From positions 248,001 through 312,000 of the IMG/VR virus record IMGVR_UViG_3300032236_000747: a stretch of DNA of 64,000 bases; one strand, 5' to 3'. Below are positions 8,851 to 64,000 of the stretch, piece after piece. The translations under genes were made by a program, and so were the position numbers. The notes under the pieces were generated by a model. It worked only from the letters and a program-made list of their open reading frames with translations. It was not told the origin of the DNA and did not search any database. Positions within the stretch are counted from its first letter, which is position 1. Each line of letters starts with the position of its first letter.

Positions 8851-9078
8851 CTAGGCCCGTTTGTCAACCTTAGCAGCGGGGTCTCTACGTATATACCTAT
8901 ATACTCGTTCATAGATGATCGAATCCTCAGCAGCTAGCTCAGTTAACATGCCCACAAGTAGTCCCAACTCATAGACAACCTTTAGGTGATGATCCCGATC
9001 TCGATACTCACTACTAGCTAGTCTAGCATTGAGCATATCATAGATGTGCTGCTGTATACGTTGATGACGATGATCCAT
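8851..9078 (-). CDS. Hypothetical protein
   Basis: Start moved to the ATG at 9078, which sits 5 nt below a TAAATA late-promoter motif. Confidence 0.65.
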   Translation of the reverse strand: MDHRHQRIQQHIYDMLNARLASSEYRDRDHHLKVVYELGLLVGMLTELAAEDSIIYERVYRYIRRDPAAKVDKRA

Positions 9079-9084
9079 GCTAGT

Positions 9085-9680
9085 ATTTACATACACGTAT
9101 ATAACTCACATAGTGCTAGTACACGTATGTATATACACATACACGTATATACACTGTGTAGCGTATATACAACACTGTATAAAATCACAGTTGACAACTC
9201 ACACATATACATATACGTATACTAGCCATATGCACGCAGCGGGGTCTTATACAGTGTATATAGATCTACCTAGACTCACAGTATATACAGTGATCTATGG
9301 TGGGAGAACCGTGGGAAAGAATCAGGAAGATTCTAGGCCGAAACGGTGGAAAATATGGCCTGAAAAACCGTGAAAATGTTGTTTTTATCATGAATTAAGG
9401 TAAAAAATATCTTGACCATTTTGGAGAGGCAGGCTATGCACAAATACCCCAAGCCATTAACTGCTCAGATAACCGAGTTATCCACAGCCTATCCACAGCC
9501 TATCCACAACCTTTACACAGCTTGTTCATAGTTCAACGTTCTCACAGCTTCTCTACTGTATATACGTATATGTGTATATGCCTTATACACGCAGCGGGGT
9601 CTTATACTGTGTATACGCATACACATAGACTTACAGTGAGTTTCTAGACTAGTCTATGTGTATATGTGTATATACGTACT
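9085..9680. other. Putative replication origin or DnaA-binding locus
   Basis: Non-coding; alternating purine-pyrimidine tracts on both sides; direct repeat ACGCAGCGGGGTCTTATAC at 9234 and 9589; three AAC(C/G)GTG(G/A) repeats at 9306, 9341 and 9365; AT-rich segment; DnaA-box array; near the gene-strand switch. Confidence 0.5.
9478..9530 (+). repeat. DnaA-box array with 11-bp period
   Basis: TTATCCACA (9478), CTATCCACA (9489), CTATCCACA (9500), CTTTACACA (9511), TTGTTCATA (9522), each separated by 2 bp. Confidence 0.7.
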
Positions 9681-10266
9681 AGTAGGTTACGCCCAGAGCT
9701 TTGCGTCCAGGACTAGCATGATCACCACAAGCATAGGTCTTTTCGTAGTGACACATCATACACAGAGTTTGGAGATTTGAAGGATCATTGTTAGTGGGAT
9801 TACCATCTATGTGATCTACCTGCAGCTGACCTGTGAGTCTTATAGTATGTGTGCAAGGATATCCTAGTACGTGTCCGTCCAGATTTTCACAGTGATCTTT
9901 GCGATATTGACGATATGGATGCTGGCTGTTCTTCCAATCAACATAGCTTTTAAAGCCTTCTTTGTGTGCGCAGACATCGTGCACAGTTTTAACCCACTCA
10001 GCATCAGGGTGTTTGGCCGCGTATTTTCTTGCTGTATTAGCATCGTGACAGCTCTTGCACACAGTTCTATACACAGGTTTTGCCGAAGTCCAGTGCCAAT
10101 CTTGTACGATTCTTGGGTTGGTGCACTGTGGAGTTGAGCAAGTGGGATGTTCAGTTAGGTCGTTGTAGCTGGGATGTCTGCGTCTAGGTGTGCCCTGTTC
10201 GCGAGCTAGATTGCGTGCTGTTTTATGATTAAGGGCGTTGAGTTCTTTGATTGTATAACGTGCCAT
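9679..10266 (-). CDS. HNH endonuclease with N-terminal Zn-finger motifs
   Basis: LQVDHIDGNPTNNDPSNLQTLCMMCH; additional CxxC motifs. Confidence 0.8.
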   Translation of the reverse strand: MARYTIKELNALNHKTARNLAREQGTPRRRHPSYNDLTEHPTCSTPQCTNPRIVQDWHWTSAKPVYRTVCKSCHDANTARKYAAKHPDAEWVKTVHDVCAHKEGFKSYVDWKNSQHPYRQYRKDHCENLDGHVLGYPCTHTIRLTGQLQVDHIDGNPTNNDPSNLQTLCMMCHYEKTYACGDHASPGRKALGVTY

Positions 10267-10375
10267 GATGAGTGTATAATGCTAAAAAATCTGCGCTGAG
10301 TGCTAGCGCACACATGTACAAATATACAGTATTCCCGGTTAGTCTTCAACGACAAGGTTTGCCATAAATATCCTT

Positions 10376-11815
10376 ATGCGCTACAATGAATTTGTTATCA
10401 AGGAAGACTTTGGCTATGCTTGGAGATTTGAGAATCCTCCCGGGGCTTTGCCAGTTAAACTAGCCACTAATACCAACCGTGAGGGCTTTATCGACGCAGA
10501 GACTTGGCCCGCAGAGGACGGCCGGGGTGTGATGCTACATCTACACTCTGTGGCCGCAGGCTGGTATTTCAGTGACGATCCCATAGAAGGATGGGTGGAC
10601 TTTGTCTGCAACATCGACAATGTCAAGGGGGGTAAGATCACTGAAACAGACTACTCCAATCCCAGCAACAGCTATGAACCCGAGCTTGATTATGACACAC
10701 TGTGGGGTGAAATCACTGAGCTGGTTGACTACTTTCGCAAGGCCTATGGTAATACCTGGAAAGAAGTAGAAGATGAGCTAGTGGGCGGGTGGACTGTTGA
10801 CGAAGCTAGAGAACCTCAACCCTCGCTGTGGCCAGGTAGATTGGGTCCACAACGTGATCTCAGCACAGAAGAAATAGACCATATCACGGACTTTACACTG
10901 AGCTGGGACTTTGACGGCCACGACGAGAACTATGATCCCTACAGGGCCTTTGAAGATGCCAGCCACGATGAACTAGGCGATGCTGTACAGGTACACTGGG
11001 GAAATCTTCTGGATGCCAGCGGGCTAGCCACTGACTATTCTAGACTATCTAGCCCTGATGCAGACAATGTGGCCCGTCTTTTGGAACTCCTAGATGATGC
11101 CCGCAAGGAAGCTGAACAGGTCTGGGAAAGCAGGATCGTTGAAACACCACAGGACGAAAACGCCATACACGAACTAGCCCAGGGTATAATCAAATGGCTG
11201 TTAGATCACATAGACAGCATACGTGATGGCTACATAGGCGGGGGTGACCTCAAGGGTGTGATAAACATAGGCACCATAGAGGACCTCACGGGCTATCTAC
11301 GCAAGCATAGAAAACAGGGCTCTATCAATGACGTGCATGGGCGTGATGCTGCTGCCCTAGAGACCATAGTCAAAGATACCCGCATGGGCCTAATACACCC
11401 CATGCCCGATGATGCTGAGGGTGCCTACAACGCAGGCCTCAAGTTCCTTATCTTGGATCTAGAACTGGTTAAAAAGAGCCCACCACGCATGTTGGGCACT
11501 ATCATGCATGAACTACGCCATGCCCTAGACTCCAGCAAGAGCAATGATCGCTTCAATAAAAAAGACGATGCCAAGAACTATATATTTCAGCCTCTTGAGA
11601 TCAACGCACGTTTTACACAGGCCCTAGACGATATACGCAAAATGGCGGCCAAGAACCCCCAGCCCGAGCTGCTCATGGATATCATCAAGTTCAACCTGAA
11701 CAAACACAATATACGACAGATATTCCCCGGGGGTACAAAAAGCCCCAGATATCGCAGACTAGTTAACAGAGTGTACCAGCAACTAGAGTACCATAAAGGA
11801 AAGACCAAGCCATGA
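10376..11815 (+). CDS. Putative internal head protein with C-terminal HEXXH metallopeptidase-like domain
   Basis: IMHELRHALD...EINARF; N-terminus MRYNEFVIKE; TAAATA-N5-ATG. Confidence 0.65.
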   Translation: MRYNEFVIKEDFGYAWRFENPPGALPVKLATNTNREGFIDAETWPAEDGRGVMLHLHSVAAGWYFSDDPIEGWVDFVCNIDNVKGGKITETDYSNPSNSYEPELDYDTLWGEITELVDYFRKAYGNTWKEVEDELVGGWTVDEAREPQPSLWPGRLGPQRDLSTEEIDHITDFTLSWDFDGHDENYDPYRAFEDASHDELGDAVQVHWGNLLDASGLATDYSRLSSPDADNVARLLELLDDARKEAEQVWESRIVETPQDENAIHELAQGIIKWLLDHIDSIRDGYIGGGDLKGVINIGTIEDLTGYLRKHRKQGSINDVHGRDAAALETIVKDTRMGLIHPMPDDAEGAYNAGLKFLILDLELVKKSPPRMLGTIMHELRHALDSSKSNDRFNKKDDAKNYIFQPLEINARFTQALDDIRKMAAKNPQPELLMDIIKFNLNKHNIRQIFPGGTKSPRYRRLVNRVYQQLEYHKGKTKP

Positions 11816-14864: not shown

Positions 14865-15641
14865 TTAGAAATAGTAGCCGTTTGGCTGCTTAGGAAAGTA
14901 GCATTCGTTGCGTTCGATTGGCAAATCTCTACGGCCTTCGCAGTAGAACTCAGCACCCAAACCAATAGCCAATGATAGGGCTACACTTTGGTTGCCAATA
15001 AATGCGCCAACACCTTTGATTAGGTTAGCAACTTCCAACAATGTAGTTGTGGGTTGATACTTACAATCTTTCCAATCAGTCAACTTGACAAAGTCTTCGT
15101 ATTCATTTGGCAAGCCAACAAACAATGCTTCTTGGTCCAAACCGTCTGCCTTCCATTGATCGTAGGCAGGATTACGCTCTCCTGGAACCCAACGACCTGT
15201 GCGGTTAACAATAACACTGATGCCTTCTGGCGCCATTGGTGTAGGCGCAGTGAGCCAAGGCGTTGTTCTTAGTTGTTCTTTAACAACAGGATCATTAATA
15301 CCAAAACAACCTGCGTAGATATCTACATAGTTGCCAGGGTGTCCAACAAACGGAACTCTAAAGCGATCTAGGTTATGGGTAACTTCGTGCTTCTTTGGAT
15401 CCAAGGGTTCGAATGATTCGATATATGTCTGTGCCAGCATAAAGGATTTCATGAACTCGTAGTCTTTGAGATTCATTCTGCCTTGATGGAATGGATTTGG
15501 ATCTGCTCCGTAAAAATGCTTGCCAATCCAATCTATTTGATTCATGTGTAAGTAGAACTTACCGCCGCCTGTGTATTGAGCAATGGGTAGACTGTAGATT
15601 AAATCGCCCAAAGTGCCCGAGTGTTTGTATGAGTTTGCCAC
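14865..15641 (-). CDS. Glycosyltransferase, GT9-like
   Basis: HSGTLGDLIYSLP; LLEVANLI...FIGNQS...LAIGLG. Confidence 0.65.
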   Translation of the reverse strand: MANSYKHSGTLGDLIYSLPIAQYTGGGKFYLHMNQIDWIGKHFYGADPNPFHQGRMNLKDYEFMKSFMLAQTYIESFEPLDPKKHEVTHNLDRFRVPFVGHPGNYVDIYAGCFGINDPVVKEQLRTTPWLTAPTPMAPEGISVIVNRTGRWVPGERNPAYDQWKADGLDQEALFVGLPNEYEDFVKLTDWKDCKYQPTTTLLEVANLIKGVGAFIGNQSVALSLAIGLGAEFYCEGRRDLPIERNECYFPKQPNGYYF

Positions 15642-15673
15642 TATAGTACTTCCTTTGTAATATTTACAACTCC

Positions 15674-16375: not shown

Positions 16376-16713
16376 GAAAGCAGTATATGAATAGACAACT
16401 TATGGAACTAGTAGCTAAATGGCCACGTTGGATTTGGTATTTCTTGCGTGATCATCTAGGCAAGGTTAGTGCTCACACACTAGGATGGATGAGCATTATC
16501 TTATGTCACTTTGCTGCCATTCCTACACTGTTAGCTGTGCTACTTGGGCAAAGTGATAAGCTACCTCCTGTAGATCTTATGGTCTTTATTTGGGCAGCTT
16601 TAACTACAATGTTCTTTAAATCACTCATTGAAAAGAACTTCTTGTATCTTTCTACAATCTGTTTGGGATTTGTGGCCCAAACCATTATCATGGGTCTGAT
16701 CCTGTTCAAATAA
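16372..16713 (+). CDS. Three-TM membrane protein, holin candidate
   Basis: Three hydrophobic helices; coupled to the hydrolase gene. Confidence 0.5.
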   Translation: MRKQYMNRQLMELVAKWPRWIWYFLRDHLGKVSAHTLGWMSIILCHFAAIPTLLAVLLGQSDKLPPVDLMVFIWAALTTMFFKSLIEKNFLYLSTICLGFVAQTIIMGLILFK

Positions 16714-16720
16714 ATAATGG

Positions 16721-17176
16721 ATGCCCCAGAACAATCCACCACAAGATCTACGTAAACTTCTTGCTAGCCTACAGCAAGATCTAGCAAGAGCAGAAGCTGC
16801 CTACGCTTCTGCACAGCAGATCACTAAACCTATCAAAGAAGTCAATGGTATTACAAACTCTATCATAAGAGAAATCAGTGACCTAATCGAACAACAGGGA
16901 AGACCTGTTGAGATTCGCTACGAGATTAATGAAATAGATGAAGCTGCACACAAACTAGTAGCCAAAATATATGCTTTGGAAGATATATTTGAAGAGTCCG
17001 TCAAGAATCTACGCAGTAACATCGAAGACGTAGAATATGACATAGAAAATGGCGAAGATGAGCCGTGGACAGTGAGAGAATCATCTCTAGCTGAACAGCA
17101 TATGAACAAACTACGCAACAAGATTCTGTACACAGAGCAACTCCTTGCCTACAAGAAACTAAAAAGCAATAAATAA
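16721..17176 (+). CDS. Coiled-coil hypothetical protein
   Basis: Heptad-like composition; TAAATA upstream. Confidence 0.7.
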   Translation: MPQNNPPQDLRKLLASLQQDLARAEAAYASAQQITKPIKEVNGITNSIIREISDLIEQQGRPVEIRYEINEIDEAAHKLVAKIYALEDIFEESVKNLRSNIEDVEYDIENGEDEPWTVRESSLAEQHMNKLRNKILYTEQLLAYKKLKSNK

Positions 17177-17180
17177 AACT

Positions 17181-17546
17181 ATGAGAGCACAAGAGTTTAC
17201 CAAAGAAGCAAGAGATCACGGACCAGGGCACAATAACATGATGCCCACGGAAGATCATTCTAGTCATCGCATGACTAACAATACAATGCCATATGAAGAA
17301 AGCCGTGTTGAAGCATTGAGAAAAAACATTGCTACATTGGAACAGCAAATCCTAGAAAAGACCAGCGCCAAACTTTGCCGCAGTCCTAAGAAGCTAGGCA
17401 ACAGTGATCAAAGCTCTTGTGTAGCACAAGGTCTACGTGCTCACACCAGTAAAGGCAAAGGCCACACAGATGGCAAAGGTCACTACCTAAAAGGTCATAG
17501 AGCTAAAAGTACTAAGTACGGCGGCGACGTTCCTGATTACAGTTAA
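17181..17546 (+). CDS. Putative internal head protein (MRAQEFTKEA) with basic His-rich C-terminus
   Basis: TAAATA-N5-ATG; capsid-targeting-like N-terminus. Confidence 0.6.
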   Translation: MRAQEFTKEARDHGPGHNNMMPTEDHSSHRMTNNTMPYEESRVEALRKNIATLEQQILEKTSAKLCRSPKKLGNSDQSSCVAQGLRAHTSKGKGHTDGKGHYLKGHRAKSTKYGGDVPDYS

Positions 17547-21521: not shown

Positions 21522-22550
21522 ATGTCCTTGTATGATGTAATAGACAGGAAGGTCATAGACTATGCTGAGATTGTTGTCTGTTTATTTGATCATTGTAATC
21601 TACGCTGTGCTTTTTGTCCACAACATCACGATGATTTATTAGGTGCCTCTAGGGATGAAATATTAGCCAAGGTTCCGGGCATTGTTAACTGGATTAATAA
21701 TAATACTAGATCAAAGTATTTTAAAATTCATATAATGGGCGGCGAAGTATTTGAAGATATCTTCATAGAACAAGGCTTTATTGAAATCTATCAGGATTTT
21801 ATAGATCAAATAAAAAATAGTGTTCCAAAAGAAAAACACGTTGAAATAAACTTTATAACAAACTTAGTTTTTCAAAAACATCAAACAGTTTTAGATTTTC
21901 TTAATATCAATAACCTAAAAGTTTCAACATCTTACGATCCTCGTGGTCGATTTACTGCTCAACAGTTTGAAACATTTAAAAATAACATAGAGATATTTAA
22001 AGACTATATTAGTATGTTTTCTGTAGTAACTACTAGACAAAACATTGAAGCAGTTATAAAAGGCGATAGTTATTTTGATTATCTATATCAAAACTTTGTT
22101 TGTGATTGGGATTCATTTATACCAGCAATAGCAGAAACAGCCGAAGCAATGATGCCTAGTGAACAAGAGTTATTAAACTTTTATAAACATCTCGTTGACC
22201 ATTATCCGGACTGTATTAATATAGAGTATTTTACTGGTAATGAAAAAGAAAATCACATGAGCTGCACAAGGGGAAACAGTTATACTATTCTAAGAGATGG
22301 TTCTATGCCCGGTGGATGCAGTGGTGCGGTGTTTCTTAAAGATGCTGAAACAAAAAACTTAGAATCAACTATCATATTACATAAGTTTTTTGATACCTAT
22401 GATTGTTTCTCGTGTGAGTATTTTAAGAAATGTCCTTTTACCTGTTTTATAAAAAATGACTACAAAAAAATTAAACGAGATCTCGGAAGCTGTGTTTTTA
22501 AAGAAACCTTTCGATACGTCGATTCAAAACATAAAAGTATCATTCATTAA
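21522..22550 (+). CDS. Radical SAM enzyme 2 with Cys-rich C-terminal domain
   Basis: CNLRCAFC, MGGE, CTRG...GGC...CFSCEYFKKCPFTC. Confidence 0.9.
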   Translation: MSLYDVIDRKVIDYAEIVVCLFDHCNLRCAFCPQHHDDLLGASRDEILAKVPGIVNWINNNTRSKYFKIHIMGGEVFEDIFIEQGFIEIYQDFIDQIKNSVPKEKHVEINFITNLVFQKHQTVLDFLNINNLKVSTSYDPRGRFTAQQFETFKNNIEIFKDYISMFSVVTTRQNIEAVIKGDSYFDYLYQNFVCDWDSFIPAIAETAEAMMPSEQELLNFYKHLVDHYPDCINIEYFTGNEKENHMSCTRGNSYTILRDGSMPGGCSGAVFLKDAETKNLESTIILHKFFDTYDCFSCEYFKKCPFTCFIKNDYKKIKRDLGSCVFKETFRYVDSKHKSIIH

Positions 22551-29629: not shown

Positions 29630-29955
29630 ACTCTAAAACTTTCGCCGCAGCCACAACGGTCGCGTTCATTAGGATTTCTAAACTCAAACCCTTCATTTAA
29701 TCCATTTCGAACATAATCTACAGTTGTTCCTAAAATATATGGAAGGTGTCTGGTGTAAATCTTGATTATGAAATCCGGATAGATAATGCGCTCTTCACTA
29801 GGGTCAAAGGAATCTGGATAGTTTAACCATTCTAAAGTATAAGCTAAACCACTACACCCTGTAGTTTTAACTCCTATCCTAAGTCCTACACTAGCTCCTC
29901 GTTTTATTTTCAACTGTTTAATCTTGTCTAGGGCTTGCTCTGTTAGTGTGATCAT
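29626..29955 (-). CDS. iscA: Fe-S cluster assembly A-type carrier IscA
   Basis: GVKTTGCSGLAY...GLNEGFEFRNPN...CGCGESF. Confidence 0.93.
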   Translation of the reverse strand: MITLTEQALDKIKQLKIKRGASVGLRIGVKTTGCSGLAYTLEWLNYPDSFDPSEERIIYPDFIIKIYTRHLPYILGTTVDYVRNGLNEGFEFRNPNERDRCGCGESFRV

Positions 29956-29993
29956 GTTATTATTTACAATAAATACAATCTAGGGAGAAACAT

Positions 29994-30287
29994 ATGAAAA
30001 AGATCCTTCTAACATTTATCATAGCATTAGCGGCAGTACCTGCAATGGCGCAGTGGCATCATCATCATTGCTGTTATCGAGGCGGATGGGTTGGTCCTGC
30101 CCTCATAGGTGGTGTAGTCGGATATGAGTTATCTCGCCCTCGTACAGTAGTTGTTGAACAACCTATTATTGTACAACAACCACAACAACCTATTATTGTA
30201 CCTAGCGCCGCCCCTGCTGGATATCATTGGCAACAAATGATCAATCCACAAACAAATCAATATCAACTAGTACTGGTACCTAACTAA
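29994..30287 (+). CDS. Small secreted Pro/Gln-rich protein with HHHHCC near the mature N-terminus
   Basis: Signal peptide MKKILL...AMA; SD; TAAATA at 29970. Confidence 0.75.
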   Translation: MKKILLTFIIALAAVPAMAQWHHHHCCYRGGWVGPALIGGVVGYELSRPRTVVVEQPIIVQQPQQPIIVPSAAPAGYHWQQMINPQTNQYQLVLVPN

Positions 30288-30288
30288 T

Positions 30289-30803: not shown

Positions 30804-30811
30804 TCTAACTT

Positions 30812-31881: not shown

Positions 31882-31887
31882 CAACGG

Positions 31888-31916
31888 TTGACAGCATTGG
31901 TAAAATCCTGTATAAT
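31888..31916 (+). promoter_or_regulatory. sigma70 promoter TTGACA-17-TATAAT with TGGTAAAA spacer motif
   Basis: Perfect consensus upstream of the ligase. Confidence 0.85.
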
Positions 31917-31943
31917 ATTAGCATTAAACAACTAGGAATACCA

Positions 31944-33269: not shown

Positions 33270-33270
33270 T

Positions 33271-33513: not shown

Positions 33514-33514
33514 A

Positions 33515-33733
33515 GTGGCTAAAGAAGACCAAATACAGGTAGAAGGATACGTAGAAGAAGTTCTACCCAACGCAATGTTTCGCGTTAAAATCAATGAAAC
33601 ACATAGAATCACGGCAGTTATCTCTGGCAAGATGCGTCAGAATAGAATACAGATCCTGCAAGGTGACAGGGTTAAAGTAGAAATGAGCCCTTACGATATG
33701 ACCAAGGGCCGTGTTGTTTATAGAGAGAAATAA
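33515..33733 (+). CDS. infA: Translation initiation factor IF-1
   Basis: [20 protein letters not shown]...SGKMR.N.I.IL.GDRV.VEMSPYD.TKGR. Confidence 0.96.
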
Positions 33734-33754
33734 AAAGCCGCTTAAAGCGGCTTT
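33734..33754. terminator. Bidirectional Rho-independent terminator
   Basis: AAAGCCGC-TTAAA-GCGGCTTT between convergent genes. Confidence 0.8.
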
Positions 33755-33759
33755 CTAGC

Positions 33760-34278
33760 TTACTCAATACCTAAGTACAATGCCCAGCTAGGGTGCTGTA
33801 AGTCGAACGGTTGCTTTCGACGTTTTTGTACCAACTGATAGTATGTAGGCTTGTAAGGCTTCATTTTAGGAACAATCTTTTTATTGTTACCTTTTTTGCT
33901 GTTACAAGGACTGCATGAAGTTGCGGTATTTTCCCATGTAGATGTTCCTCCGTGGCTAACTGGTAGCACATGGTCAAGTGTAGCTGTCTTACGATCTACC
34001 TTTGATTCACAGTAGACACAGGTATATCCGTCACGCAAGAAAATGTTCTGCTTTGAGTAGCGGATCGTAGTCTTGGGCTTCATATATTCAGTCAGCATGA
34101 TTACAGCAGGAACCTTGGTTTCCCACTTTTCGCTGCGGACTTTCCAGTCTTCATACCATTCTAATACATAAGCCTTTTCTAAAACCATATATCTGATGGC
34201 ATCTTCCCATGAGATTACACTCAAAGGAAGCAGGCTAACTGGGTTAGCGTCCGAATTTAATACTAATACGCCGTTCAT
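33760..34278 (-). CDS. HNH endonuclease (McrA-like)
   Basis: VLVLN...RDGYTCVYC...TLDHVLP.S.GG...WEN...C..CN..KG. Confidence 0.9.
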   Translation of the reverse strand: MNGVLVLNSDANPVSLLPLSVISWEDAIRYMVLEKAYVLEWYEDWKVRSEKWETKVPAVIMLTEYMKPKTTIRYSKQNIFLRDGYTCVYCESKVDRKTATLDHVLPVSHGGTSTWENTATSCSPCNSKKGNNKKIVPKMKPYKPTYYQLVQKRRKQPFDLQHPSWALYLGIE

Positions 34279-34365
34279 GATAATATTTATGGTTTAGTTG
34301 ATTACGTTACTATTATAACAGGTTTAGGGAAAACGAGCAATAGCTAAAATAGAATAAATACCTTT

Positions 34366-46361: not shown

Positions 46362-46384
46362 CACAAAAACAGGTAAATACGCAT

Positions 46385-47566
46385 ATGACACATCCAATAC
46401 CATTTCCAACAAGCCCTCAAACAGGGCAACAATTTCTAGCAGATAATACAGTGACTTATATCTGGACTGGAGATCGTTGGTCTTCTAGTCGTGCTCTAGT
46501 TAATAGATATACAACATTTACTGTAGAAGAAGGCGCATTTGCAGATTTTGACTACAATCCATCAATTAATAAGTTATTAGATAGTGGTGATAGTACTACA
46601 GAATCATACCGTTTTATAGATGCAGGCAGTTCTAATGTTGGACTTGAGCAAATAACTGTCACATCATCTTATCTAGCACCTAGCGGATACGCACCTGGTG
46701 ATTTTGGCACAGTTACTTACTATATTGTACACGACGGCGCACAAGAAGCTGGTCTAGTTTTCCACGGACTAACCGGCGGTGGAGACCAAACAATAACAGG
46801 CACCTACGCTCAGGGCAGTAATACTTTAGTAATACCTCCATTATATCAGAGTTTATGGTCACAAATAGTATCTGTTAGAGCTTATGTGGTAGACAGTCTC
46901 GGTGATACATATTTTGCTGATGTTAGCGATATGTGGGAAACACCTTATGGTCCGTGTCTAGTAGCAGGCACATTAATGACATTGGCTGATGGAACACATA
47001 AGAAGATTGAAGACATTACATATGATGATGTATTGAGTGTATGGAACTTTGATCTAGGTGAAATGTCAGAAGCCCGTCCACTATGGGTCAAACGCAAACA
47101 AACCGCCGGAGACTATACACTGGTAAAGTTCAGCGATGGTACAGAATTACGCACTGTTGGACACCATATATTCAACAAACAAGTAGGCGAGTTTACAAAG
47201 ATTATCACTGATGATACTCCGGTAGGTACTATCACCGTAAACGAACAAGGACAAGAGATTGCTATTGTTAGCAAAGAACTAGTGCGAGAAACTGTAGACT
47301 ACTATAACATCTGGACACAGTATCATTTGAACGCTTATGCTAATGGTCTATTAACTGGCAACAAATATTGTAATATCTACCCTGTTGTGGATATGAAGTA
47401 TGTGAAAGATGACAGAACTTTACGCTCTGTAGAAGAATTTGCGGATATCGATGAGAAATATATCGCAGGTATGAGATTACAAGAACAAACATTCGATTTA
47501 GCATTTATACAAACTATGGTAGATAGAATAGAATTATTAGACAGCAAGGCTGCTATAACAGCATAA
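46385..47566 (+). CDS. Structural protein with Hint (intein-like) domain at about 46955-47362
   Basis: GP-CLVAGTLMTLADG...IEDI...DYYNI...YANGLLTGN. Confidence 0.85.
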   Translation: MTHPIPFPTSPQTGQQFLADNTVTYIWTGDRWSSSRALVNRYTTFTVEEGAFADFDYNPSINKLLDSGDSTTESYRFIDAGSSNVGLEQITVTSSYLAPSGYAPGDFGTVTYYIVHDGAQEAGLVFHGLTGGGDQTITGTYAQGSNTLVIPPLYQSLWSQIVSVRAYVVDSLGDTYFADVSDMWETPYGPCLVAGTLMTLADGTHKKIEDITYDDVLSVWNFDLGEMSEARPLWVKRKQTAGDYTLVKFSDGTELRTVGHHIFNKQVGEFTKIITDDTPVGTITVNEQGQEIAIVSKELVRETVDYYNIWTQYHLNAYANGLLTGNKYCNIYPVVDMKYVKDDRTLRSVEEFADIDEKYIAGMRLQEQTFDLAFIQTMVDRIELLDSKAAITA

Positions 47567-50068: not shown

Positions 50069-50505
50069 ATATAAAATGTGTAAACGTTGTTAACGGGATG
50101 CTCTTCTGGCTGTGGATCTAGTTCATAGACACGTGGAAAATACACAGCGTATTTTGTGGGCCAGTTGGGATTTAAAAACGTGCGTGATATAAATCGATCA
50201 CAATGATCTAGAACAATGGGCAACAAGCGTTCTGTAAAATCTTTACCCAAGGCTAGTCCGCCGTCGATTATTATAGTGTCCCAATGTTCGTTCAAACTAA
50301 ACCAATCTTTGACCCTTATTTTAGGATCATTGTAAACTGGCTCTAGGTCCCATGCTTCTGTACATAAAGGTAATAGTAGCTTAGTGCTACCCAGCAATAA
50401 AACTTTACCTCTACAATATCTTTCAAATACAGCATAATCATCTTGATTAGGAGCAGCGGGCCACTCTAATGTTGTCCAGAATTCGGGGTCGTTGATCATG
50501 CTCAT
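50044..50505 (-). CDS. Hypothetical protein, possibly a degenerate Rossmann methyltransferase fold
   Basis: KVLLLGST...WDL...DWF...WDTIIIDGGL. Confidence 0.55.
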   Translation of the reverse strand: MSMINDPEFWTTLEWPAAPNQDDYAVFERYCRGKVLLLGSTKLLLPLCTEAWDLEPVYNDPKIRVKDWFSLNEHWDTIIIDGGLALGKDFTERLLPIVLDHCDRFISRTFLNPNWPTKYAVYFPRVYELDPQPEEHPVNNVYTFYIWNKKQSL

Positions 50506-50593
50506 GTGGATATTTAAGCGGTAAATAACGGTAGAACATACAATAATGGCTGAGATTACCTAACTAGGTAAATATAGCAAACGGAGACAACAA

Positions 50594-50920
50594 ATGTCAG
50601 TAAACTTTAGAAAAGGTGCTTATTACCCAGGCACAACCCAGAATCAAACAACAACTAGCACTAATGCTGTGACCAATGCTTTTAGTTCAACTACGAGCAT
50701 TATTCGTGTCGCAGTACAAAATGATACATATGTTCAGCCTGTTAACAACTCTAGCACAACGGCCACTGTTAGCAGTATGATCATCCCAGGTGGTGGCGTA
50801 GAGTTCTTCGCAGTTCGCCCGAATACATATCTAGCACACCTATTAGTGAGTTCGGCGGGTTGGATAAGTGTTACTGAACTTTCTAATCTAAACAATATTG
50901 TAAACGGAACAACTTACTAA
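50594..50920 (+). CDS. Hypothetical structural protein
   Basis: SD GGAG; TAAATA upstream. Confidence 0.75.
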   Translation: MSVNFRKGAYYPGTTQNQTTTSTNAVTNAFSSTTSIIRVAVQNDTYVQPVNNSSTTATVSSMIIPGGGVEFFAVRPNTYLAHLLVSSAGWISVTELSNLNNIVNGTTY

Positions 50921-51969: not shown

Positions 51970-51980
51970 TAAATACTATC

Positions 51981-52256
51981 ATGAGAGCAAAAGAATTTAC
52001 AATTAACATTCCTATCAACATTAAGATCAATGGTGATGGCGAGCCTGAAATCAGCACAAGTCAAGATACCGAAGCTGATGTAGATTCTAACCCTGTATTT
52101 GTTCCGCCTCTACAGCAACATTTAGAGCTACACAAAGCAGAACTAGGTAAAGAAAGCCCTGTCATTGACAAACTTACACAAGATAATGATATTGGCACAG
52201 AACCGGACGGAACCGAAGCACAGCTAGCTAGACTCAAGCAACTGATGGCCCGATAA
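51981..52256 (+). CDS. Hypothetical protein (MRAKEF N-terminus)
   Basis: TAAATA-N5-ATG. Confidence 0.75.
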   Translation: MRAKEFTINIPINIKINGDGEPEISTSQDTEADVDSNPVFVPPLQQHLELHKAELGKESPVIDKLTQDNDIGTEPDGTEAQLARLKQLMAR

Positions 52257-60316: not shown

Positions 60317-61153
60317 ATGAAAACATTCAAAGACTATCTTAGGGAAGCACAACAGGCCGCAGCAGCGGAACCTGAAGATGATGAACCTCCTAAGAAAAGA
60401 ACACAAACACAAGATCGTCCTAATACCAGTGCCTATGATAGAGCATTCGGACAACAAGGACAAGATCACCCCCTAGCACAAAATCCTGATCACAATCGCA
60501 GAGAACGTGAACCAGAACAGCCAGATGATCCTAGAGGCCGTCAATCTAGCAGAGATAATACTCGCAATAGAACAAGCGGTCTAAGCACACCGGGTATGTC
60601 GGATTTACTTGCTAACCTAAGAGATATAGAGCCACATCCAGATGATGTTCCTAATCCAGACCAAGAACCTAGACAAGACATAGAACTAAGAGTAGACACA
60701 GAAAACCTACCATCGGTGGCAGGACAGGCTCTACAAGCTTCGGGTATTGTCAATCCAGAATGGCACAAGGTAGCTAACCTACCAGGCAACATGAAACGTG
60801 CTATACAATCACTAGGTCGACATTTGTTTAGTAGCATGACAAGTACTCCTACAGAAGAAATACAAATGATTGCTAATCTAGGAGGACAAGGTCCTAACAC
60901 TACAAGAGAAGTTAACTCTGTGGCTAACTGGATTCGTGAACACGGTGATGATCAAGGACCAGGCAACATAGATTTCGCAACTAGCATCCCAGGATACAAC
61001 GCAGAGATACATAACTATGTAGCAGCAGGAATACATTGGTTGTTGGTTAGAGATGAGTTTGGACAATACATTTATAGTTGGCCAGAGCAAGATTCTCTAG
61101 AGCATCGATCAGCTGCAAGACTAGGCAACGATAGACCAAGATTAGGTAGGTAA
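60317..61153 (+). CDS. Putative internal head protein (MKTFKDYLREA)
   Basis: T4 capsid-targeting-like N-terminus; disordered N-terminal half. Confidence 0.6.
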   Translation: MKTFKDYLREAQQAAAAEPEDDEPPKKRTQTQDRPNTSAYDRAFGQQGQDHPLAQNPDHNRREREPEQPDDPRGRQSSRDNTRNRTSGLSTPGMSDLLANLRDIEPHPDDVPNPDQEPRQDIELRVDTENLPSVAGQALQASGIVNPEWHKVANLPGNMKRAIQSLGRHLFSSMTSTPTEEIQMIANLGGQGPNTTREVNSVANWIREHGDDQGPGNIDFATSIPGYNAEIHNYVAAGIHWLLVRDEFGQYIYSWPEQDSLEHRSAARLGNDRPRLGR

Positions 61154-61160
61154 ATATAAA

Positions 61161-62102
61161 ATGAGACCAGAACGATTAAGATTATTTGCTCAACTAGCAG
61201 AGCAGTTAATGGAAGCTAGTACCGCCGGCGATTTAGTTAAGCGCCATCCAGGTGGTAATGAGATCATGCAGAAGTTGCATAGAGATCTAGGACTACCACA
61301 CAACGTAACATGGTCCGAACTAGGCATGGGAGAACGTTTCCATTGGACTCCGTTTAAAGAAACCAAGTTCGGTAGCTGGGTTATTGTTAAAGGACCAAAA
61401 GGCACAGGAGCCATTCAAGCTCAGAAAGGCGGCGGCGCATATCTAGGCATGGCTAGCACAGGTGGCCCTATTGAAACAATCAGAGATGACCGTGGTGGTA
61501 ACATTGTAGACTTTCTAGTAAGACATCTAGGCAAGGATCTAAGAAGATATAGCGGAGACACAGTAGGACCAGCGTCGACATATCAACGAACTGATAATCC
61601 AAGACAAATGACATATCCTGAAAAAACAAAATACAGGAAAGATCTTAAAACACTGGGCGGTTCAAAGAAAACCATGGATGCTGATGCCATACTAAAAAGA
61701 TTTAAACCTCTATGGAAATCTGGTGTAGTAAAAGCTATGGCTGACATTCAAGGTTTTGTTTCTCAACAAATCAAAGCAGGTGCCTATGCCAAAGCTGAAA
61801 GTAAAATTCAAAGATTAAAAAAACTTCAATCAATAATGAATATTTTAGACAATGATGAAGAACTACCACCATCAAATGATTACAGTGATAGTAATATTCT
61901 TTCATCTGCTGTTAAGAGTGCTATTACTCTCGGAGCAGCGCACTACTATCCAGAGTTAACAGGTAATGTAACTAAAAACGGTTACTCTTATCGTGCAGGT
62001 AATGCTGAAGGTACACAAAAGTTATTACAAGATATCGCAGGAGGTGATACAAGTAAAATGTTTACAGTAGCACATTTCTTTAGAAGGAGTTTAATATCAT
62101 GA
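61161..62102 (+). CDS. Hypothetical protein
   Basis: TAAATA-N4-ATG. Confidence 0.8.
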   Translation: MRPERLRLFAQLAEQLMEASTAGDLVKRHPGGNEIMQKLHRDLGLPHNVTWSELGMGERFHWTPFKETKFGSWVIVKGPKGTGAIQAQKGGGAYLGMASTGGPIETIRDDRGGNIVDFLVRHLGKDLRRYSGDTVGPASTYQRTDNPRQMTYPEKTKYRKDLKTLGGSKKTMDADAILKRFKPLWKSGVVKAMADIQGFVSQQIKAGAYAKAESKIQRLKKLQSIMNILDNDEELPPSNDYSDSNILSSAVKSAITLGAAHYYPELTGNVTKNGYSYRAGNAEGTQKLLQDIAGGDTSKMFTVAHFFRRSLIS

Positions 62103-63139
62103 AGCTAGGACAGATTGTTACAGAAGCCAACATAGCCCTTAAGGTATTAAAAGACCCTAAACTACCTAAGCAGTTATACATTGCTTTTACTCATGATAGT
62201 AGTCTTCCTGGAAACATTATTGCTAGACTAGGAACAAAGCCTACAGTAGAGCAAGTAGTTAAAGCATGGAGTGATCTAATAGATAGTTCTCTAAGAGATA
62301 GTAACTACGGTGACCTAAGTTCTAATGGTAAGTTTGATGATTGGTTGTTAAGATTGTATATATCCGGTCAAGTTGATTATGAAGATATCAACGGAGAAGC
62401 AGGAGATGCTCTTGGACTGTGGAGTGCCCTAAGCAGAAGAGGTAGACTTGATGTTAAAGATCAAGACTTCAACAAGTTTAAAGATATCCATAGCCTTAGA
62501 GCAGCAATGAATAAACCTCAGTATCGTGCTGAACTAGAAAGAATTAAAAACTCGGAAATTATTGAAAAACACAAGCGTGCTAGAAAAGAAGTTGTGTTAA
62601 TCGACGATGACAGATTCCATGTTATTCTACCATTGAACTATGGTGCTTGTTATACATTTAATAACTCCGAAGGTATTCAAGCAAACTTCTGTACTGGAGG
62701 TAGTAACGGTCTACACTGGTTCCAGAACTATGCTCCTTATACACCTATTATCAGTATTCTAGATAAAACTAATATGAATAATAAGTGGGGCAAATGGCAG
62801 TTACACGCATGGCCAGCTTTTGGTGCTGCCGGACAGTTAGTTAATGCTGAACAAAATAACAGAGGTGATCTACCGGGAAATGATCGTAAGTTTGCTGAAC
62901 TATTTCCGGGATTAATGAAGAGAATAGTAGCAGCTCTGGCAGAGAAGGGCCCTGAGATTGAACAACTCAGCGGTGAACCGGATTCTACAGGAACTACACT
63001 AATTCGCGGAGGCTACGATATACAAGACGCTATTTCTCGTATTAAACAAACTTTTCCAGCTAGCTATGCTTCGGAAGAGCCCGGAGCAGAAGAACCGGGC
63101 GCCGGCGAACCAGCACCAGGCGGCGAAGAGTTGTACTAA
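62099..63139 (+). CDS. Hypothetical protein (MKLGQIVTEA), C-terminal EPGA repeats
   Basis: Coupled ORF. Confidence 0.8.
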   Translation: MKLGQIVTEANIALKVLKDPKLPKQLYIAFTHDSSLPGNIIARLGTKPTVEQVVKAWSDLIDSSLRDSNYGDLSSNGKFDDWLLRLYISGQVDYEDINGEAGDALGLWSALSRRGRLDVKDQDFNKFKDIHSLRAAMNKPQYRAELERIKNSEIIEKHKRARKEVVLIDDDRFHVILPLNYGACYTFNNSEGIQANFCTGGSNGLHWFQNYAPYTPIISILDKTNMNNKWGKWQLHAWPAFGAAGQLVNAEQNNRGDLPGNDRKFAELFPGLMKRIVAALAEKGPEIEQLSGEPDSTGTTLIRGGYDIQDAISRIKQTFPASYASEEPGAEEPGAGEPAPGGEELY

Positions 63140-63140
63140 A

Positions 63141-63246
63141 CCCACCTTAGGGCCGTTGTCGCTAACGGTTAGGACGAAAGTCCAGGCGTCACAAGGCGGC
63201 TGCTGCCGACCACATTACTTACGCCAGAGTATTGTGATAAGTGAGC
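63141..63246 (+). ncRNA. Unclassified structured RNA with predicted pseudoknot
   Basis: Four hairpins including GGAC-GAAA-GUCC; loop ACGCC complementary to upstream GGCGU; GC-rich patch in an intergenic gap. Confidence 0.55.
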
Positions 63247-63259
63247 AATAAATACTATT

Positions 63260-64000
63260 ATGAAAATACATCATCTCTTAAATGAAACTGTAGAAACTTA
63301 TACTACTGTAGATGAGTTCGTGGACATTATGAAGGATTTTTTACCTTTGGCCATGCATCATCTTAAGATAGATGCGCTACCTCACATTAGGTTAGAAAAG
63401 TATATCAAAGACTCACATCAGCCTACGTTTGGCAAATACGTTAACGAAGAAAATGTGATACACGTAGGCATTGAAAATCGTCACCCATTAGATGTTCTAA
63501 GAACACTAGCACATGAACTAGTACACTTTAAACAAGGAACAGAGAATAGATTAGATGCCAAGAGCGGCGAAACTGGCAGTCCTATAGAGAATGAAGCACA
63601 CGAGGTAGCTGGTATTATCATGCGTCATTTTGGTAAAAGATATCCTCATTATTTTACAGACACAGCTATTACTATTTCCGAAGATTGGAACAAAGTTAAT
63701 CACCACGATAAAACTAACGGCCTAAGTCGTAAAGCAGTCAAAGCCTATCGTCGTGAACATCCAGGTAGTAAACTACAAACAGCAGTTACTACTAAACCTA
63801 GTAAGTTAAAGGCGGGTAGTAAGGATGCTAAACGCCGTAAAAGTTTCTGTGCTCGTATGAGTGGCAACAAAGGCCCAATGAAAAAGCCTAATGGTAAACC
63901 TACTCCTAAAGCATTGGCCTTGCGCCGTTGGAACTGTGAGAGCATTGAAGAAATGCGTCAGCTGATCGAAACAGCTGAACAGGTTATCATGCAGGAAAAA
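63260..64000 (+). CDS. Partial ORF: HEXXH metallopeptidase-like domain plus basic RRKSFCARM...RRWNC domain
   Basis: Manual translation MKIHHLLNE...LRTLAHELVHFKQ...ENEA; runs off the window end; TAAATA-N5-ATG. Confidence 0.8.
   Translation, partial: MKIHHLLNETVETYTTVDEFVDIMKDFLPLAMHHLKIDALPHIRLEKYIKDSHQPTFGKYVNEENVIHVGIENRHPLDVLRTLAHELVHFKQGTENRLDAKSGETGSPIENEAHEVAGIIMRHFGKRYPHYFTDTAITISEDWNKVNHHDKTNGLSRKAVKAYRREHPGSKLQTAVTTKPSKLKAGSKDAKRRKSFCARMSGNKGPMKKPNGKPTPKALALRRWNCESIEEMRQLIETAEQVIMQEK

What the first reader, a model, noticed from the sequence alone, without database searches (positions are those of the whole stretch)
9078..63262. Late genes share an exact TAAATA-N5-ATG architecture without SD, suggesting leaderless mRNAs
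Seen with exactly 5 nt spacing at starts 10376, 17181, 34366, 46385, 51981 and 63260 (plus) and 9078, 29955, 34278 and 50505 (minus). Spacing is 4 nt at 16721 and 61161. Known: T4 late promoters (TATAAATA) initiate a few nt downstream. Inference: these transcripts begin at or next to the AUG, whereas early genes use a strong AAGGAG. This would be a translational switch that could involve the phage IF-1.
Basis: partly seen in the sequence, partly recalled or inferred. Interest (0 to 1): 0.6.

Follow-up and report, generated by a model that had tools for sequence, protein, structure and literature searches.

The report
Late promoters fused to start codons
In this uncultivated 355-kb jumbo phage and its many environmental relatives, about half of the predicted T4-type late promoters sit exactly 5 bases before an ATG with no ribosome-binding site, so these late messages very probably start at their own start codon (leaderless mRNAs); no RNA data were available to prove it.

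Summary
All 12 listed sites check out. TAAATA-N5-ATG occurs 11 times in the window against 1.1 expected. Genome-wide, 25 of 223 TAAATA are followed by ATG at exactly 5 nt and 10 at 4 nt, against about 3.7 expected per offset.

TAAATA behaves as a DNA-level signal: it is depleted 2.5- to 4-fold inside genes on both strands. The genome encodes a gp55-like late sigma. T4 geometry (TATAAATA at -13 to -6) puts the A of ATG at +1. In the N5 class the base before ATG is always a pyrimidine, Shine-Dalgarno (SD) pairing is absent, and the start is ATG.

The layout is conserved in hundreds of uncultivated jumbo-phage contigs. Upstream of TerL and the tail tube gene it reads: covarying terminator, TAAATA, 5 variable bases, ATG. 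This holds down to 34% protein identity, while more distant orthologs use GAGGAGG.

Leaderless late mRNAs are the best explanation, unproven for lack of RNA data.

- About half of the predicted late promoters have 13-40-nt leaders with SD, and internal cistrons use SD.
- The IF-1 link is speculative. IF-1 is genuine, sits in a sigma70-type operon and is conserved in the clade, but Sinorhizobium phage Phosso has IF-1 without the motif.

The parts
10365..10378 (+). TAAATA-N5-ATG; head of gene 10376-11815 (479 aa, unknown function)
   Evidence: no PHROG hit
16711..16723 (+). TAAATA-N4-ATG; gene 16721-17176 (151 aa). The TAA of the motif is the stop codon of the upstream ORF.
17170..17183 (+). TAAATA-N5-ATG; gene 17181-17546 (121 aa, N-terminus MRAQEFT). 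The stop codon of the upstream ORF overlaps the motif.
34355..34368 (+). TAAATA-N5-ATG; gene 34366-35943 (525 aa), first gene of a long + strand block that includes the 2048-aa ORF. Conserved in orthologous loci L088 and L089; N4 in L090.
46374..46387 (+). TAAATA-N5-ATG; gene 46385-47566 (393 aa), followed by a tail-fibre-like gene at 47580-49202
51970..51983 (+). TAAATA-N5-ATG; gene 51981-52256 (91 aa, MRAKEFT), just before the 2308-aa collagen-repeat / S74-chaperone fibre gene
61151..61163 (+). TAAATA-N4-ATG; gene 61161-62102 (313 aa)
63249..63262 (+). TAAATA-N5-ATG; gene 63260 onward (427 aa, runs past the window end)
9076..9089 (-). TAAATA-N5-ATG; gene 9078-8851 (75 aa), upstream of tRNA(CAT) at 8826-8750
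29953..29966 (-). TAAATA-N5-ATG; gene 29955-29626 (109 aa, phrog_17776). It shares a 38-bp intergenic region with the diverging leadered late promoter of gene 29994.
34276..34289 (-). TAAATA-N5-ATG; gene 34278-33760 (172 aa, HNH endonuclease), diverging from the 34366 promoter. Conserved in L088 and L089.
50503..50516 (-). TAAATA-N5-ATG; gene 50505-50044 (153 aa)
29970..29996 (+). Leadered version of the same promoter: TAAATA, 18 nt containing GGGAG, then ATG of gene 29994-30287
50569..50596 (+). Leadered version: TAAATA, 19 nt containing CGGAG, then ATG of gene 50594-50920
15639..15666 (-). Leadered version: TAAATA, 19 nt containing AAGGAAG, then GTG of gene 15641-14865
33515..33733 (+). Phage IF-1 (infA homolog, 72 aa, GTG start, AAAGGAG SD)
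   Evidence: PF01176 at 87 bits, above the cut-off; full-length match to solved bacterial IF-1 chains, E about 2e-24
31888..31916 (+). Perfect sigma70-type promoter (TTGACA-17-TATAAT, 12 of 12) heading the DNA ligase ... IF-1 operon
   Evidence: ligase is phrog_114
33731..33757 (.). Hairpin terminator closing the ligase/IF-1 operon (the scan scored it on the - strand; the stem is palindromic)
600..8900 (-). Early region: at least 12 near-perfect TTGACA-N17-TATAAT promoters, many followed by a short leader ending in TTTTTAACAAGGAG-N6/7-ATG

Best explanation
(R)TAAATA is the -10-like late promoter element of this phage lineage. Host RNA polymerase core carrying the phage's gp55-like sigma (genome 128223-129131, outside the window) reads it.

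In the T4 register the element spans -12/-11 to -6. In the N5 class the five variable bases are therefore -5 to -1, and the A of ATG is +1. The transcript begins pppAUG with no leader and no Shine-Dalgarno sequence. Its first cistron must be initiated by direct binding of ribosomes and fMet-tRNA to the 5'-terminal AUG. N4 sites give a leader of 0-1 nt.

Downstream cistrons of the same operons use ordinary SD-led or coupled initiation. Roughly half of the late promoters instead lie 13-40 nt upstream and make conventional SD-containing leaders.

What is shown and what is inferred:
- Shown: motif, spacing, depletion, conservation, the sigma homolog, absence of SD.
- Inferred: gp55 dependence, late timing, the exact 5' end, the mode of translation.
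For: 1. Spacing. There is a sharp N5 (and N4) spike in the window, in the genome and in relatives. In 80 TerL-linked loci: N5 107, N4 28, N6 13, N7 27, at most 3 at any other spacing from 0 to 16, and a secondary hump at 17-26.

2. DNA-level signal. TAAATA inside genes is depleted on both strands: sense 64 against 164 +/- 12, antisense 45 against 174 +/- 12 in synonymous-codon shuffles. TATAAT and four of five control hexamers are not clearly depleted on either strand (obs/exp 0.79-1.16); only TAAAAT is also exactly 1.0 antisense. Genome-wide there are 223 against 390 expected.

3. Sigma factor. A gp55 homolog is present (phrog_12791 at 3.6e-84, phrog_234 at 1.8e-26). It keeps T4 residues R57, F86, Y97 and T99, four of the seven DNA-pocket residues tested by mutation in PMC7892883; that paper assigns Y97 to A-12 and T99 to A-8.

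4. Geometry. In T4 the adenines at -12, -9 and -8 are flipped. TATAAATA is therefore at -13 to -6, so TAAATA-N5 places the A of ATG at +1.

5. Start-site signature. The base at -1 is a pyrimidine in 19 of 19 N5 sites here and in 105 of 107 in relatives, against 46% for SD-led genes (Fisher p = 4e-6). The base before TAAATA is a purine in 18 of 19.

6. Leaderless features.
- No SD pairing.
- After TAAATA-N5: ATG 25, against GTG 3, TTG 3 and CTG 1.
- The first 35 nt are less structured than in other genes (p = 3e-4).

7. Context.
- Intrinsic terminators end 3-6 nt before the motif at the tail tube gene, TerL and gene 145188.
- Upstream of TerL the hairpin covaries across 38 relatives: 99.1% of cells paired; 30 double-change cells against 7.3 in shuffles, 0 of 500 reaching the observed value.
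- The 5-nt spacer takes 30 different sequences, all ending in T or C.
- Several sites are in divergent intergenic regions with no upstream gene on the same strand.

8. The same hexamer occurs at 13-40 nt together with an SD, so it is not itself a ribosome signal.

9. Genes served are late-type: tail tube, TerS, TerL, head-tail adaptor and a structural protein.

10. Tail tube orthologs keep terminator-TAAATA-N5-ATG down to 34% identity. A more distant set has GAGGAGG or TAGGAG instead.
Against: - There is no direct 5'-end evidence. No RNA run was listed, and no metagenome contig starts at such an ATG.
- gp33 and gp45 homologs were not detected by sequence, so full T4-type activation is unproven.
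- The upstream T of the T4 octamer is not conserved, and H95 and L54 of gp55 are replaced. The start-site distance could therefore differ by a base or two from T4.
- For N4 (and for N6 and N7 in relatives) a fixed distance does not land on the A.
- In three window cases (16721, 17181, 51981) the upstream gene's stop codon lies within or directly abuts the motif, so re-initiation on read-through transcripts could also translate those genes.
- Gene calls are from a home-made caller.
- Related contigs are not phylogenetically independent.
Confidence: 0.72

Rival explanations
1. TAAATA is a promoter giving leaderless mRNAs, but it is read by the host primary sigma (a minimal -10-only promoter, as in Thermus phage phiYS40 or Deinococcus) rather than by the phage gp55 homolog.
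For: -10-like elements placed next to ORFs drive leaderless genes with the housekeeping sigma in Deinococcus-Thermus (PMC12340547). phiYS40 is reported to make mostly leaderless middle/late mRNAs (PMC3594737). gp33 and gp45 were not found here.
Against: - The phage's own sigma70-type promoters are textbook TTGACA-N17-TATAAT.
- TAAATA lacks the T at the last position of a sigma70 -10 hexamer.
- TATAAT is not depleted inside genes, while TAAATA is.
- A gp55 homolog with conserved DNA-pocket residues is encoded.
- The genes served are structural and packaging genes.
Confidence: 0.1
2. The motif acts on RNA, not DNA. It would be an SD-independent, A/U-rich initiation or stop-restart signal on polycistronic transcripts, with the TAA inside the motif terminating the upstream frame and the ribosome restarting 8-9 nt later.
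For: At 16721 and 17181 the stop codon of the upstream ORF lies within the motif, and at 51981 it directly abuts it. Many sites sit in very short intergenic gaps.
Against: - Depletion is at least as strong on the antisense strand of genes.
- The motif stands behind covarying terminators and in divergent intergenic regions with no upstream co-oriented gene.
- The same hexamer sits at 13-40 nt together with a normal SD.
- The exact hexamer and the pyrimidine at -1 are conserved rather than general A/U richness.
Confidence: 0.06
3. TAAATA is the late promoter, but initiation is a few bases upstream or scattered. The mRNAs would carry 2-5-nt leaders and be poorly translated. The layout would then serve mainly to set low protein output for promoter-proximal, low-copy products, not to create a privileged class of messages.
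For: - Several served genes are low-copy products: terminase subunits, HNH endonuclease, adaptor, peptide deformylase.
- The tail sheath gene uses an SD leader.
- N4, N6 and N7 variants exist.
Against: - The tail tube protein, a high-copy product, is in the N5 class here and in 18 of 18 clade-A orthologs.
- The strict pyrimidine at -1 followed by A argues for one dominant start at the A.
- Strict ATG use fits recognition of a 5'-terminal AUG.
Confidence: 0.1
4. Chance, base composition or a start-codon annotation artefact.
For: The genome is 60% A+T. In AT-rich relatives the bare pattern is not enriched: PA5oct 15 against 12 control, T4 10 against 5, GAP32 5 against 8.
Against: - 0 of 100 shuffles reach the observed count.
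- The spike is confined to N4 and N5.
- The starts are first-in-frame ATGs chosen without reference to the motif.
- The layout is conserved at orthologous genes across deep divergence.
Confidence: 0.01

Closest known systems
Bacteriophage T4 late promoters (TATAAATA; gp55 sigma, gp33 co-activator, gp45 sliding clamp)
   Same: An A/T-rich -10-like element with no -35. A gp55-family sigma with conserved DNA-pocket residues. Structural and packaging genes are served. The register of the element relative to +1 is the one assumed here (PMC2988020, PMC7892883).
   Different: - The core is (R)TAAATA; the first T of the octamer is not conserved.
- The sigma is 302 aa with an N-terminal extension of about 150 aa.
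- gp33 and gp45 homologs were not detected.
- T4 shows no enrichment of TAAATA-N5-ATG (10 against 5 control), so the start-codon fusion is not a T4 feature.
Thermus phage phiYS40 middle/late leaderless mRNAs
   Same: A large lytic phage reported to make most middle/late transcripts without a leader. It is proposed to favour them by shifting host initiation factors, with IF2 up and IF3 down (review PMC3594737 citing Sevostyanova et al. 2007).
   Different: - It is an unrelated phage and host. Leaderless genes with a -10 element next to the ORF are already common across the Deinococcus-Thermus phylum to which that host belongs (PMC12340547).
- No gp55-type sigma is involved.
- Here only about half of the late promoters are of this type, and the phage carries its own IF-1.
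- The primary phiYS40 paper could not be opened.
Deinococcus-Thermus '-10 region adjacent to ORF' genes
   Same: A -10 element at a fixed short distance from the start codon acts as the promoter of leaderless genes, with an experimentally shown spacing requirement (PMC12340547).
   Different: These are cellular genes with a TANNNT motif read by the housekeeping sigma. Here a phage-specific hexamer is presumably read by a phage sigma.
Pseudomonas phage PA5oct (closest cultured relative: TerL 56%, gp55 homolog 45% identity)
   Same: - A jumbo T4-superfamily myovirus with the long-form gp55 homolog.
- TAAATA is found upstream of its sheath, tube, adaptor and other structural genes.
   Different: - There the motif lies 19-46 nt upstream with SDs, and only one N5 case occurs in 50 kb.
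- There is no genome-wide N5 enrichment and no IF-1.
- The PA5oct omics paper reports only sigma70-like promoters and does not mention leaderless RNAs (PMC7318152).
Lambda cI mRNA from PRM, and leaderless mRNAs in general
   Same: A 5'-terminal AUG is the ribosome recognition signal. IF1 and IF2 stimulate it, high IF3 inhibits it, extra fMet-tRNA strongly helps, and an unstructured 5' end is needed (review PMC9031893).
   Different: Lambda cI is a single regulatory gene. Here there is a whole class of 27 genes tied to one promoter type.
Poxvirus late promoters (TAAATG initiator overlapping the start codon); from my own knowledge, not tested here
   Same: A late-specific TAAAT element abuts or overlaps the ATG, so transcription start and translation start are fused.
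   Different: It is a eukaryotic virus with its own RNA polymerase, and its mRNAs acquire a 5' poly(A) leader by slippage. There is no homology; it is an analogy only.

Membership tests
T4-type (gp55-dependent) late promoter | A/T-rich -10-like TATAAATA-type element with no conserved -35 | tested here: met
   (R)TAAATA is invariant. Information content upstream of -13 is near zero in 19 N5 and 8 N4 sites. The first T of the T4 octamer is not conserved, so this is a variant motif.
T4-type (gp55-dependent) late promoter | Phage encodes a gp55-family sigma | tested here: met
   Genome 128223-129131: phrog_12791 at 3.6e-84, phrog_234 at 1.8e-26; T4 gp55 matches at 1.8e-7. R57, F86, Y97 and T99 are conserved.
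T4-type (gp55-dependent) late promoter | gp33 co-activator present | tested here: inconclusive
   T4 gp33 finds nothing in the genome. It is a small, fast-evolving protein, and no profile was tried.
T4-type (gp55-dependent) late promoter | gp45-type sliding clamp as mobile activator | tested here: inconclusive
   phrog_223, T4 gp45 and PF02916 give no credible hit. The only PF02916 match is 15 bits, inside a 1905-aa frame.
T4-type (gp55-dependent) late promoter | Precedes late (virion and packaging) genes | tested here: met
   Tail tube, TerS, TerL, head-tail adaptor and a structural protein carry N5. The sheath gene carries the leadered form. The timing itself has not been measured.
T4-type (gp55-dependent) late promoter | Transcription starts about 6 nt after the element | not testable with these tools
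   No RNA run was listed. The start is inferred from T4 numbering and the pyrimidine(-1)/A(+1) signature.
Leaderless mRNA | Primary 5' end at, or within a few nt of, the start codon | not testable with these tools
   One search listed none. No metagenome contig begins at such an ATG.
Leaderless mRNA | Promoter -10 element at a fixed short distance from the start codon | tested here: met
   N5/N4 spike in the genome and in relatives. Spacer length is conserved while its sequence varies.
Leaderless mRNA | No Shine-Dalgarno pairing upstream | tested here: met
   Median duplex energy is -0.1 against -4.2 kcal/mol, p = 1.4e-7.
Leaderless mRNA | AUG (not GUG or UUG) start and an unstructured 5' coding end | tested here: met
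   ATG 25, against GTG 3, TTG 3 and CTG 1 after TAAATA-N5. MFE of the first 35 nt is -0.5 against -1.7, p = 3e-4.
Bacterial IF-1 (InfA) | Single S1-like OB domain of about 72 aa matching PF01176 above its cut-off | tested here: met
   87.1 bits against a cut-off of 30.2. End-to-end alignment to solved IF-1 chains, E about 2e-24.
Bacterial IF-1 (InfA) | Acts on leaderless late messages of this phage | not tested
   There is only co-occurrence within one clade, plus one counter-example: Phosso has IF-1 but no motif enrichment.

The most novel reading that the evidence does not exclude
A widespread clade of uncultivated jumbo phages may have coupled a gp55-type late promoter directly to the start codon. 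It would then support this class of 5'-AUG messages with its own translation factors: an IF-1 made from a sigma70-type operon, and a peptide deformylase that itself sits behind an N5 promoter. That would be a virus-encoded shift of the initiation machinery toward leaderless late mRNAs. Nothing here excludes it. The only support is clade-wide co-occurrence and the published in vitro stimulation of leaderless translation by IF1.
Probability: 0.13. Interest if true: 0.8.

Novelty: new variant of a known kind. Interest (0 to 1): 0.55.

Why it matters
- **New combination.** Leaderless phage late mRNAs are documented for Thermus phage phiYS40, and gp55-type late promoters for T4-like phages. I found no description of the two combined: not in the PA5oct omics paper, the RaK2 paper or a 2026 jumbo-phage review, and not in four literature searches.
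- **Annotation.** If confirmed, the motif fixes the true start codon of about 27 genes per genome in hundreds of environmental contigs.
- **Evolution.** It provides a natural series in which orthologous genes (tail tube, TerL) have switched between SD-led and leaderless initiation.
- **Open question made testable.** It offers a concrete way to ask why huge phages carry initiation factors.
- **Practical use.** The motif is a compact 14-bp promoter-plus-start cassette that could be tried in expression systems once the sigma is characterised.

Tried and rejected
- **RNA evidence.** The look-up of sequencing runs (kind rna) on window 29800-35800 listed no run, so read laying was never used.
- **Transcript-like contigs.** I looked for metagenome contigs that begin at the ATG of tail tube orthologs. 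None did.
- **Phage initiator tRNA.** Extra fMet-tRNA strongly favours leaderless translation. None of the three tRNA(CAT) genes has the C1-A72 mismatch or the three G-C pairs in the anticodon stem. The idea is rejected.
- **Alternative PA5oct motif.** ATTTANATATG, seen at two PA5oct genes, was tested as a PA5oct version of the layout. It gave 4 matches against 3 in the control. Rejected.
- **Cultured relatives.** TAAATA-N5-ATG is not enriched in PA5oct, T4, GAP32 or Phosso. A different motif with the same layout in those phages was not excluded.
- **gp45 and gp33.** Searches with PHROG, Pfam and the T4 proteins found nothing usable.
- **MRAKEFT as an RNA element.** The shared ATGAGAGCAAAAGAATT at three motif genes could have been a downstream translation element of leaderless mRNAs. 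Two further copies are SD-led, so it is a protein N-terminal motif. Rejected.
- **Direct similarity.** Megablast of 10 kb of the window against phage records found no match.
- **Primary phiYS40 paper.** It is not held in the library, so it is cited through a review.
- **Not used.** The large protein searches (search for homologous proteins, the search of protein representatives), structure prediction and complex prediction were not used; no claim depends on them.
- **Other points.** The host was not identified.

Full report
**What the window is**

The window is bases 248001-312000 of a single 354,680-bp IMG/VR virus record. GC content is 40.4% and CheckV rates it complete. It is a jumbo member of the T4 superfamily:
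- tail sheath, tail tube, large and small terminase, gp20-type portal, gp32-like SSB, UvsX-like recombinase and ATP-dependent ligase;
- 14 tRNAs;
- several ORFs of 2,000-4,600 aa.

No near-identical phage record exists. The closest cultured relative is Pseudomonas phage PA5oct (TerL 56% identity). Next come Sinorhizobium phage Phosso and the RaK2/GAP32 group. More than 599 IMG/VR stretches encode a TerL relative; the 80 best kept are 62-84% identical.

- Window: TAAATA-N5-ATG occurs 11 times against 1.14 expected.
- Genome: of 223 TAAATA, 25 are followed by ATG at exactly 5 nt and 10 at 4 nt, with about 3.7 expected at any offset.
- At first-in-frame ATGs of ORFs of at least 60 aa the histogram reads 0, 0, 0, 0, 8, 21, 0 for spacings 0-6. 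A low, broad hump follows at 17-25.
- With a simple home-made gene caller, 27 genes carry the motif at N4 or N5, 24 of them at the first possible start.

**The motif is a DNA signal, most likely the late promoter**

- TAAATA is strongly avoided inside genes on both strands: 64 against 164 +/- 12 in sense and 45 against 174 +/- 12 in antisense, in synonymous-codon shuffles. TATAAT and four of five control hexamers are not clearly depleted on either strand (obs/exp 0.79-1.16); only TAAAAT is also exactly 1.0 antisense. Avoidance on the non-transcribed orientation is what one expects of a promoter. It is not expected of a ribosome signal.
- The genome encodes a gp55-family sigma of 302 aa at 128223-129131. 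It keeps T4 residues R57, F86, Y97 and T99, four of the seven DNA-pocket residues tested by mutation; the structure paper assigns Y97 to A-12 and T99 to A-8.
- The same hexamer also stands 13-40 nt upstream of some 25-29 other starts, each with a normal SD in between. These include the sheath gene and window genes 29994, 50594 and 15641.
- The genes behind N5 sites include tail tube, TerS, TerL, head-tail adaptor and a structural protein.
- gp33 and a gp45-type clamp were not found. This leaves the activation mechanism open.

**Why the N5 class is probably leaderless**

- Register. In the T4 open complex the adenines at -12, -9 and -8 are flipped into gp55 pockets (PMC7892883). That fixes TATAAATA at -13 to -6. 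With TAAATA at -11 to -6 and a five-base spacer, the A of ATG is +1.
- Start-site signature. The base before the ATG is a pyrimidine in 19 of 19 N5 sites here and in 105 of 107 in relatives, against 46% at SD-led genes. A pyrimidine at -1 followed by a purine at +1 is the usual bacterial start-site preference (my own knowledge).
- No SD. These genes pair with the anti-SD even less than random sequence does.
- ATG only. They use ATG almost exclusively.
- Open 5' end. The first 35 nt of their coding sequence are less structured than in other genes.
- Terminators. At the tail tube gene, TerL and gene 145188 an intrinsic terminator ends 3-6 nt before the motif. A transcript for the downstream gene has nowhere else to begin, unless it reads through the terminator.

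**Comparative evidence**

TerL relatives:
- Among 67 distinct upstream contexts, 43 have TAAATA at N5, 8 at N4, 1 at N7, 2 are leadered and 13 lack it.
- The 43 N5 spacers take 30 different sequences, all ending in T or C.
- The preceding hairpin covaries: 99.1% of cells are paired, and 30 cells carry compensatory double changes against 7.3 in shuffles, with 0 of 500 shuffles reaching that.

Tail tube orthologs from metagenomes fall into two sets:
- 18 of 18 in the nearer set (34-65% identity) keep terminator, TAAATA, N5, ATG, with quite different stems.
- A more distant set (30-39% identity) has the gene operon-internal behind GAGGAGG or TAGGAG.

Other comparisons:
- The divergent pair at window 34278/34366 is conserved in two orthologous loci.
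- Whole related records are enriched over a reversed-pattern control: 15 against 4, 16 against 1, 9 against 3, 6 against 1, 5 against 2, 8 against 4 and 4 against 1. Two fragments show nothing clear.
- Cultured relatives are not enriched: PA5oct 15 against 12, T4 10 against 5, GAP32 5 against 8, Phosso 3 against 2.
- In PA5oct's structural region the hexamer is present before the sheath, tube, adaptor and other virion genes, but at 19-46 nt with SDs. Only one N5 case occurs there.

The start-codon fusion thus looks like a derived trait of the uncultivated clade.

The layout is not shared by 'late genes' in general:
- About half of the predicted late promoters are leadered.
- Internal cistrons of late operons have weak to good SDs, for example 43371, 45555, 47580, 49223 and 62099.
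- Ordinary SD-led initiation therefore continues late in infection, so no wholesale switch of the translation apparatus is required.

The IF-1 gene (window 33515-33733):
- It is a genuine, full-length infA homolog.
- It has its own AAAGGAG and a GTG start.
- It ends an operon that begins with a perfect TTGACA-17-TATAAT promoter before the ligase gene, and the operon closes with a terminator. It is therefore probably made early, by inference.

Co-occurrence of IF-1 and the motif:
- IF-1 is present in the two best related records, and at least 113 IMG/VR stretches encode a relative. The 80 best loci together show the same N4/N5 spike.
- IF-1 is absent from PA5oct, T4 and GAP32.
- This is essentially one clade, and Phosso carries IF-1 without the motif.

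A review states that IF1 and IF2 stimulate leaderless translation in vitro, and that extra initiator tRNA helps strongly (PMC9031893). None of the phage's three tRNA(CAT) genes is an initiator. The IF-1 link is therefore possible but unsupported.

**Comparison with known systems**

- phiYS40 is reported to make mostly leaderless middle/late mRNAs and to shift host IF2 and IF3 (PMC3594737).
- Deinococcus-Thermus genomes place a -10 element next to ORFs, with a proven spacing requirement (PMC12340547).
- phiKZ shows no leaderless transcripts, and AR9 has 5' UTRs of 26-491 nt.
- The PA5oct omics paper reports only sigma70-like promoters.
- Neither the RaK2 paper nor a 2026 jumbo-phage review mentions leaderless mRNAs, late promoters of this kind or initiation factors.

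I therefore rate this as a new variant of a known kind: a gp55-type late promoter fused to the start codon, conserved in a large uncultivated clade.

**Limits**

- There is no RNA evidence.
- The host is unknown.
- Gene calls and start choices come from a simple caller. The key histograms use first-in-frame ATGs chosen without reference to the motif.
- Related contigs share ancestry, so counts over them are not independent events.
- The N4, N6 and N7 variants imply some flexibility in start-site choice that I cannot resolve.
- The large protein searches, structure prediction and read laying were not used.

Noticed in passing
window 600-8900 (- strand); also 15685 and 31888 (+): At least 14 near-perfect sigma70 promoters (TTGACA-N17-TATAAT). 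Many share a conserved spacer (TGGTAAAACC) and a short leader ending in TTTTTAACAAGGAG. They stand before small minus-strand genes, which looks like a stereotyped early promoter/5'UTR cassette.
   Followed up: partly
G000 63745-64251 (L155:8745-9251): A phage peptide deformylase (phrog_2890, 4.8e-37) sits directly behind a TAAATA-N5-ATG site. This is a second translation-related gene in the genome, and one predicted to be late and leaderless itself.
   Followed up: no
window 17181 and 51981; G000 57916, 72617, 73009; also L164, L167, L179, L180, L187: Otherwise dissimilar small proteins (85-184 aa) all begin with MRA(K/Q)EF(T/I/L). Only the first seven residues align. Some are behind N5 promoters and others behind SDs. 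The meaning of the shared N-terminus is unexplained.
   Followed up: partly
window 8750-8826 (-): The tRNA(CAT) lacks initiator features (G1-C72 paired, no GGG/CCC in the anticodon stem). From memory, its anticodon arm resembles tRNA-Ile2 (lysidine type). A sigma70-type promoter at 8867-8838 lies just upstream, inside the 3' end of the 75-aa late ORF.
   Followed up: partly
window 29953-29996: Two late promoters of opposite orientation share a 38-bp intergenic region. One is leaderless (gene 29955, - strand) and one is leadered with GGGAG (gene 29994, + strand).
   Followed up: yes
window 33760-34278 (-): An HNH endonuclease gene (phrog_16726, 1.5e-32) sits behind an N5 late promoter, diverging from the 34366 promoter. 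The arrangement is conserved in L088 and L089.
   Followed up: partly
window 37216-43362 and 52279-59205 (+); G000 104990-118729 (-): Giant ORFs of 2048 aa, 2308 aa and 4579 aa. The 2308-aa ORF has collagen triple-helix repeats and a C-terminal S74 endosialidase-chaperone domain, so it is probably a fibre.
   Followed up: no
L147:5956-5985 (PA5oct record about 128846-128875): The annotated PA5oct TerL start lies inside the loop of a terminator hairpin. Homology with this clade points to the ATG 27 nt downstream, right after the T-run. That ATG has no SD and no TAAATA.
   Followed up: partly
L255-L300 (metagenome contigs): A distant set of tail tube orthologs (30-39% identity) is operon-internal behind a very strong GAGGAGG or TAGGAG. 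Nearer orthologs are leaderless, so the same gene uses opposite initiation modes in sister groups.
   Followed up: yes
G000 328174-328753: ARAGORN calls a 580-nt permuted 'tmRNA*' with the tag AKKVNANDSQFLMVA. It is unusually long and may be a false positive.
   Followed up: no
G000 128223-129131 (L007:1042-1950): The gp55 homolog carries an N-terminal extension of about 150 aa that is absent from T4 gp55. The extension is shared with PA5oct-like, 121Q/RaK2-like and Salicola SCTP-2 phages, where the gene is mostly annotated as hypothetical or structural.
   Followed up: partly
window 21986-21999 (-): The only TAAATA-N5-ATG in the window that is not at a gene start. It lies antisense inside gene 21522-22550 and precedes an 8-codon frame. 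It could be chance or a small antisense transcript.
   Followed up: partly
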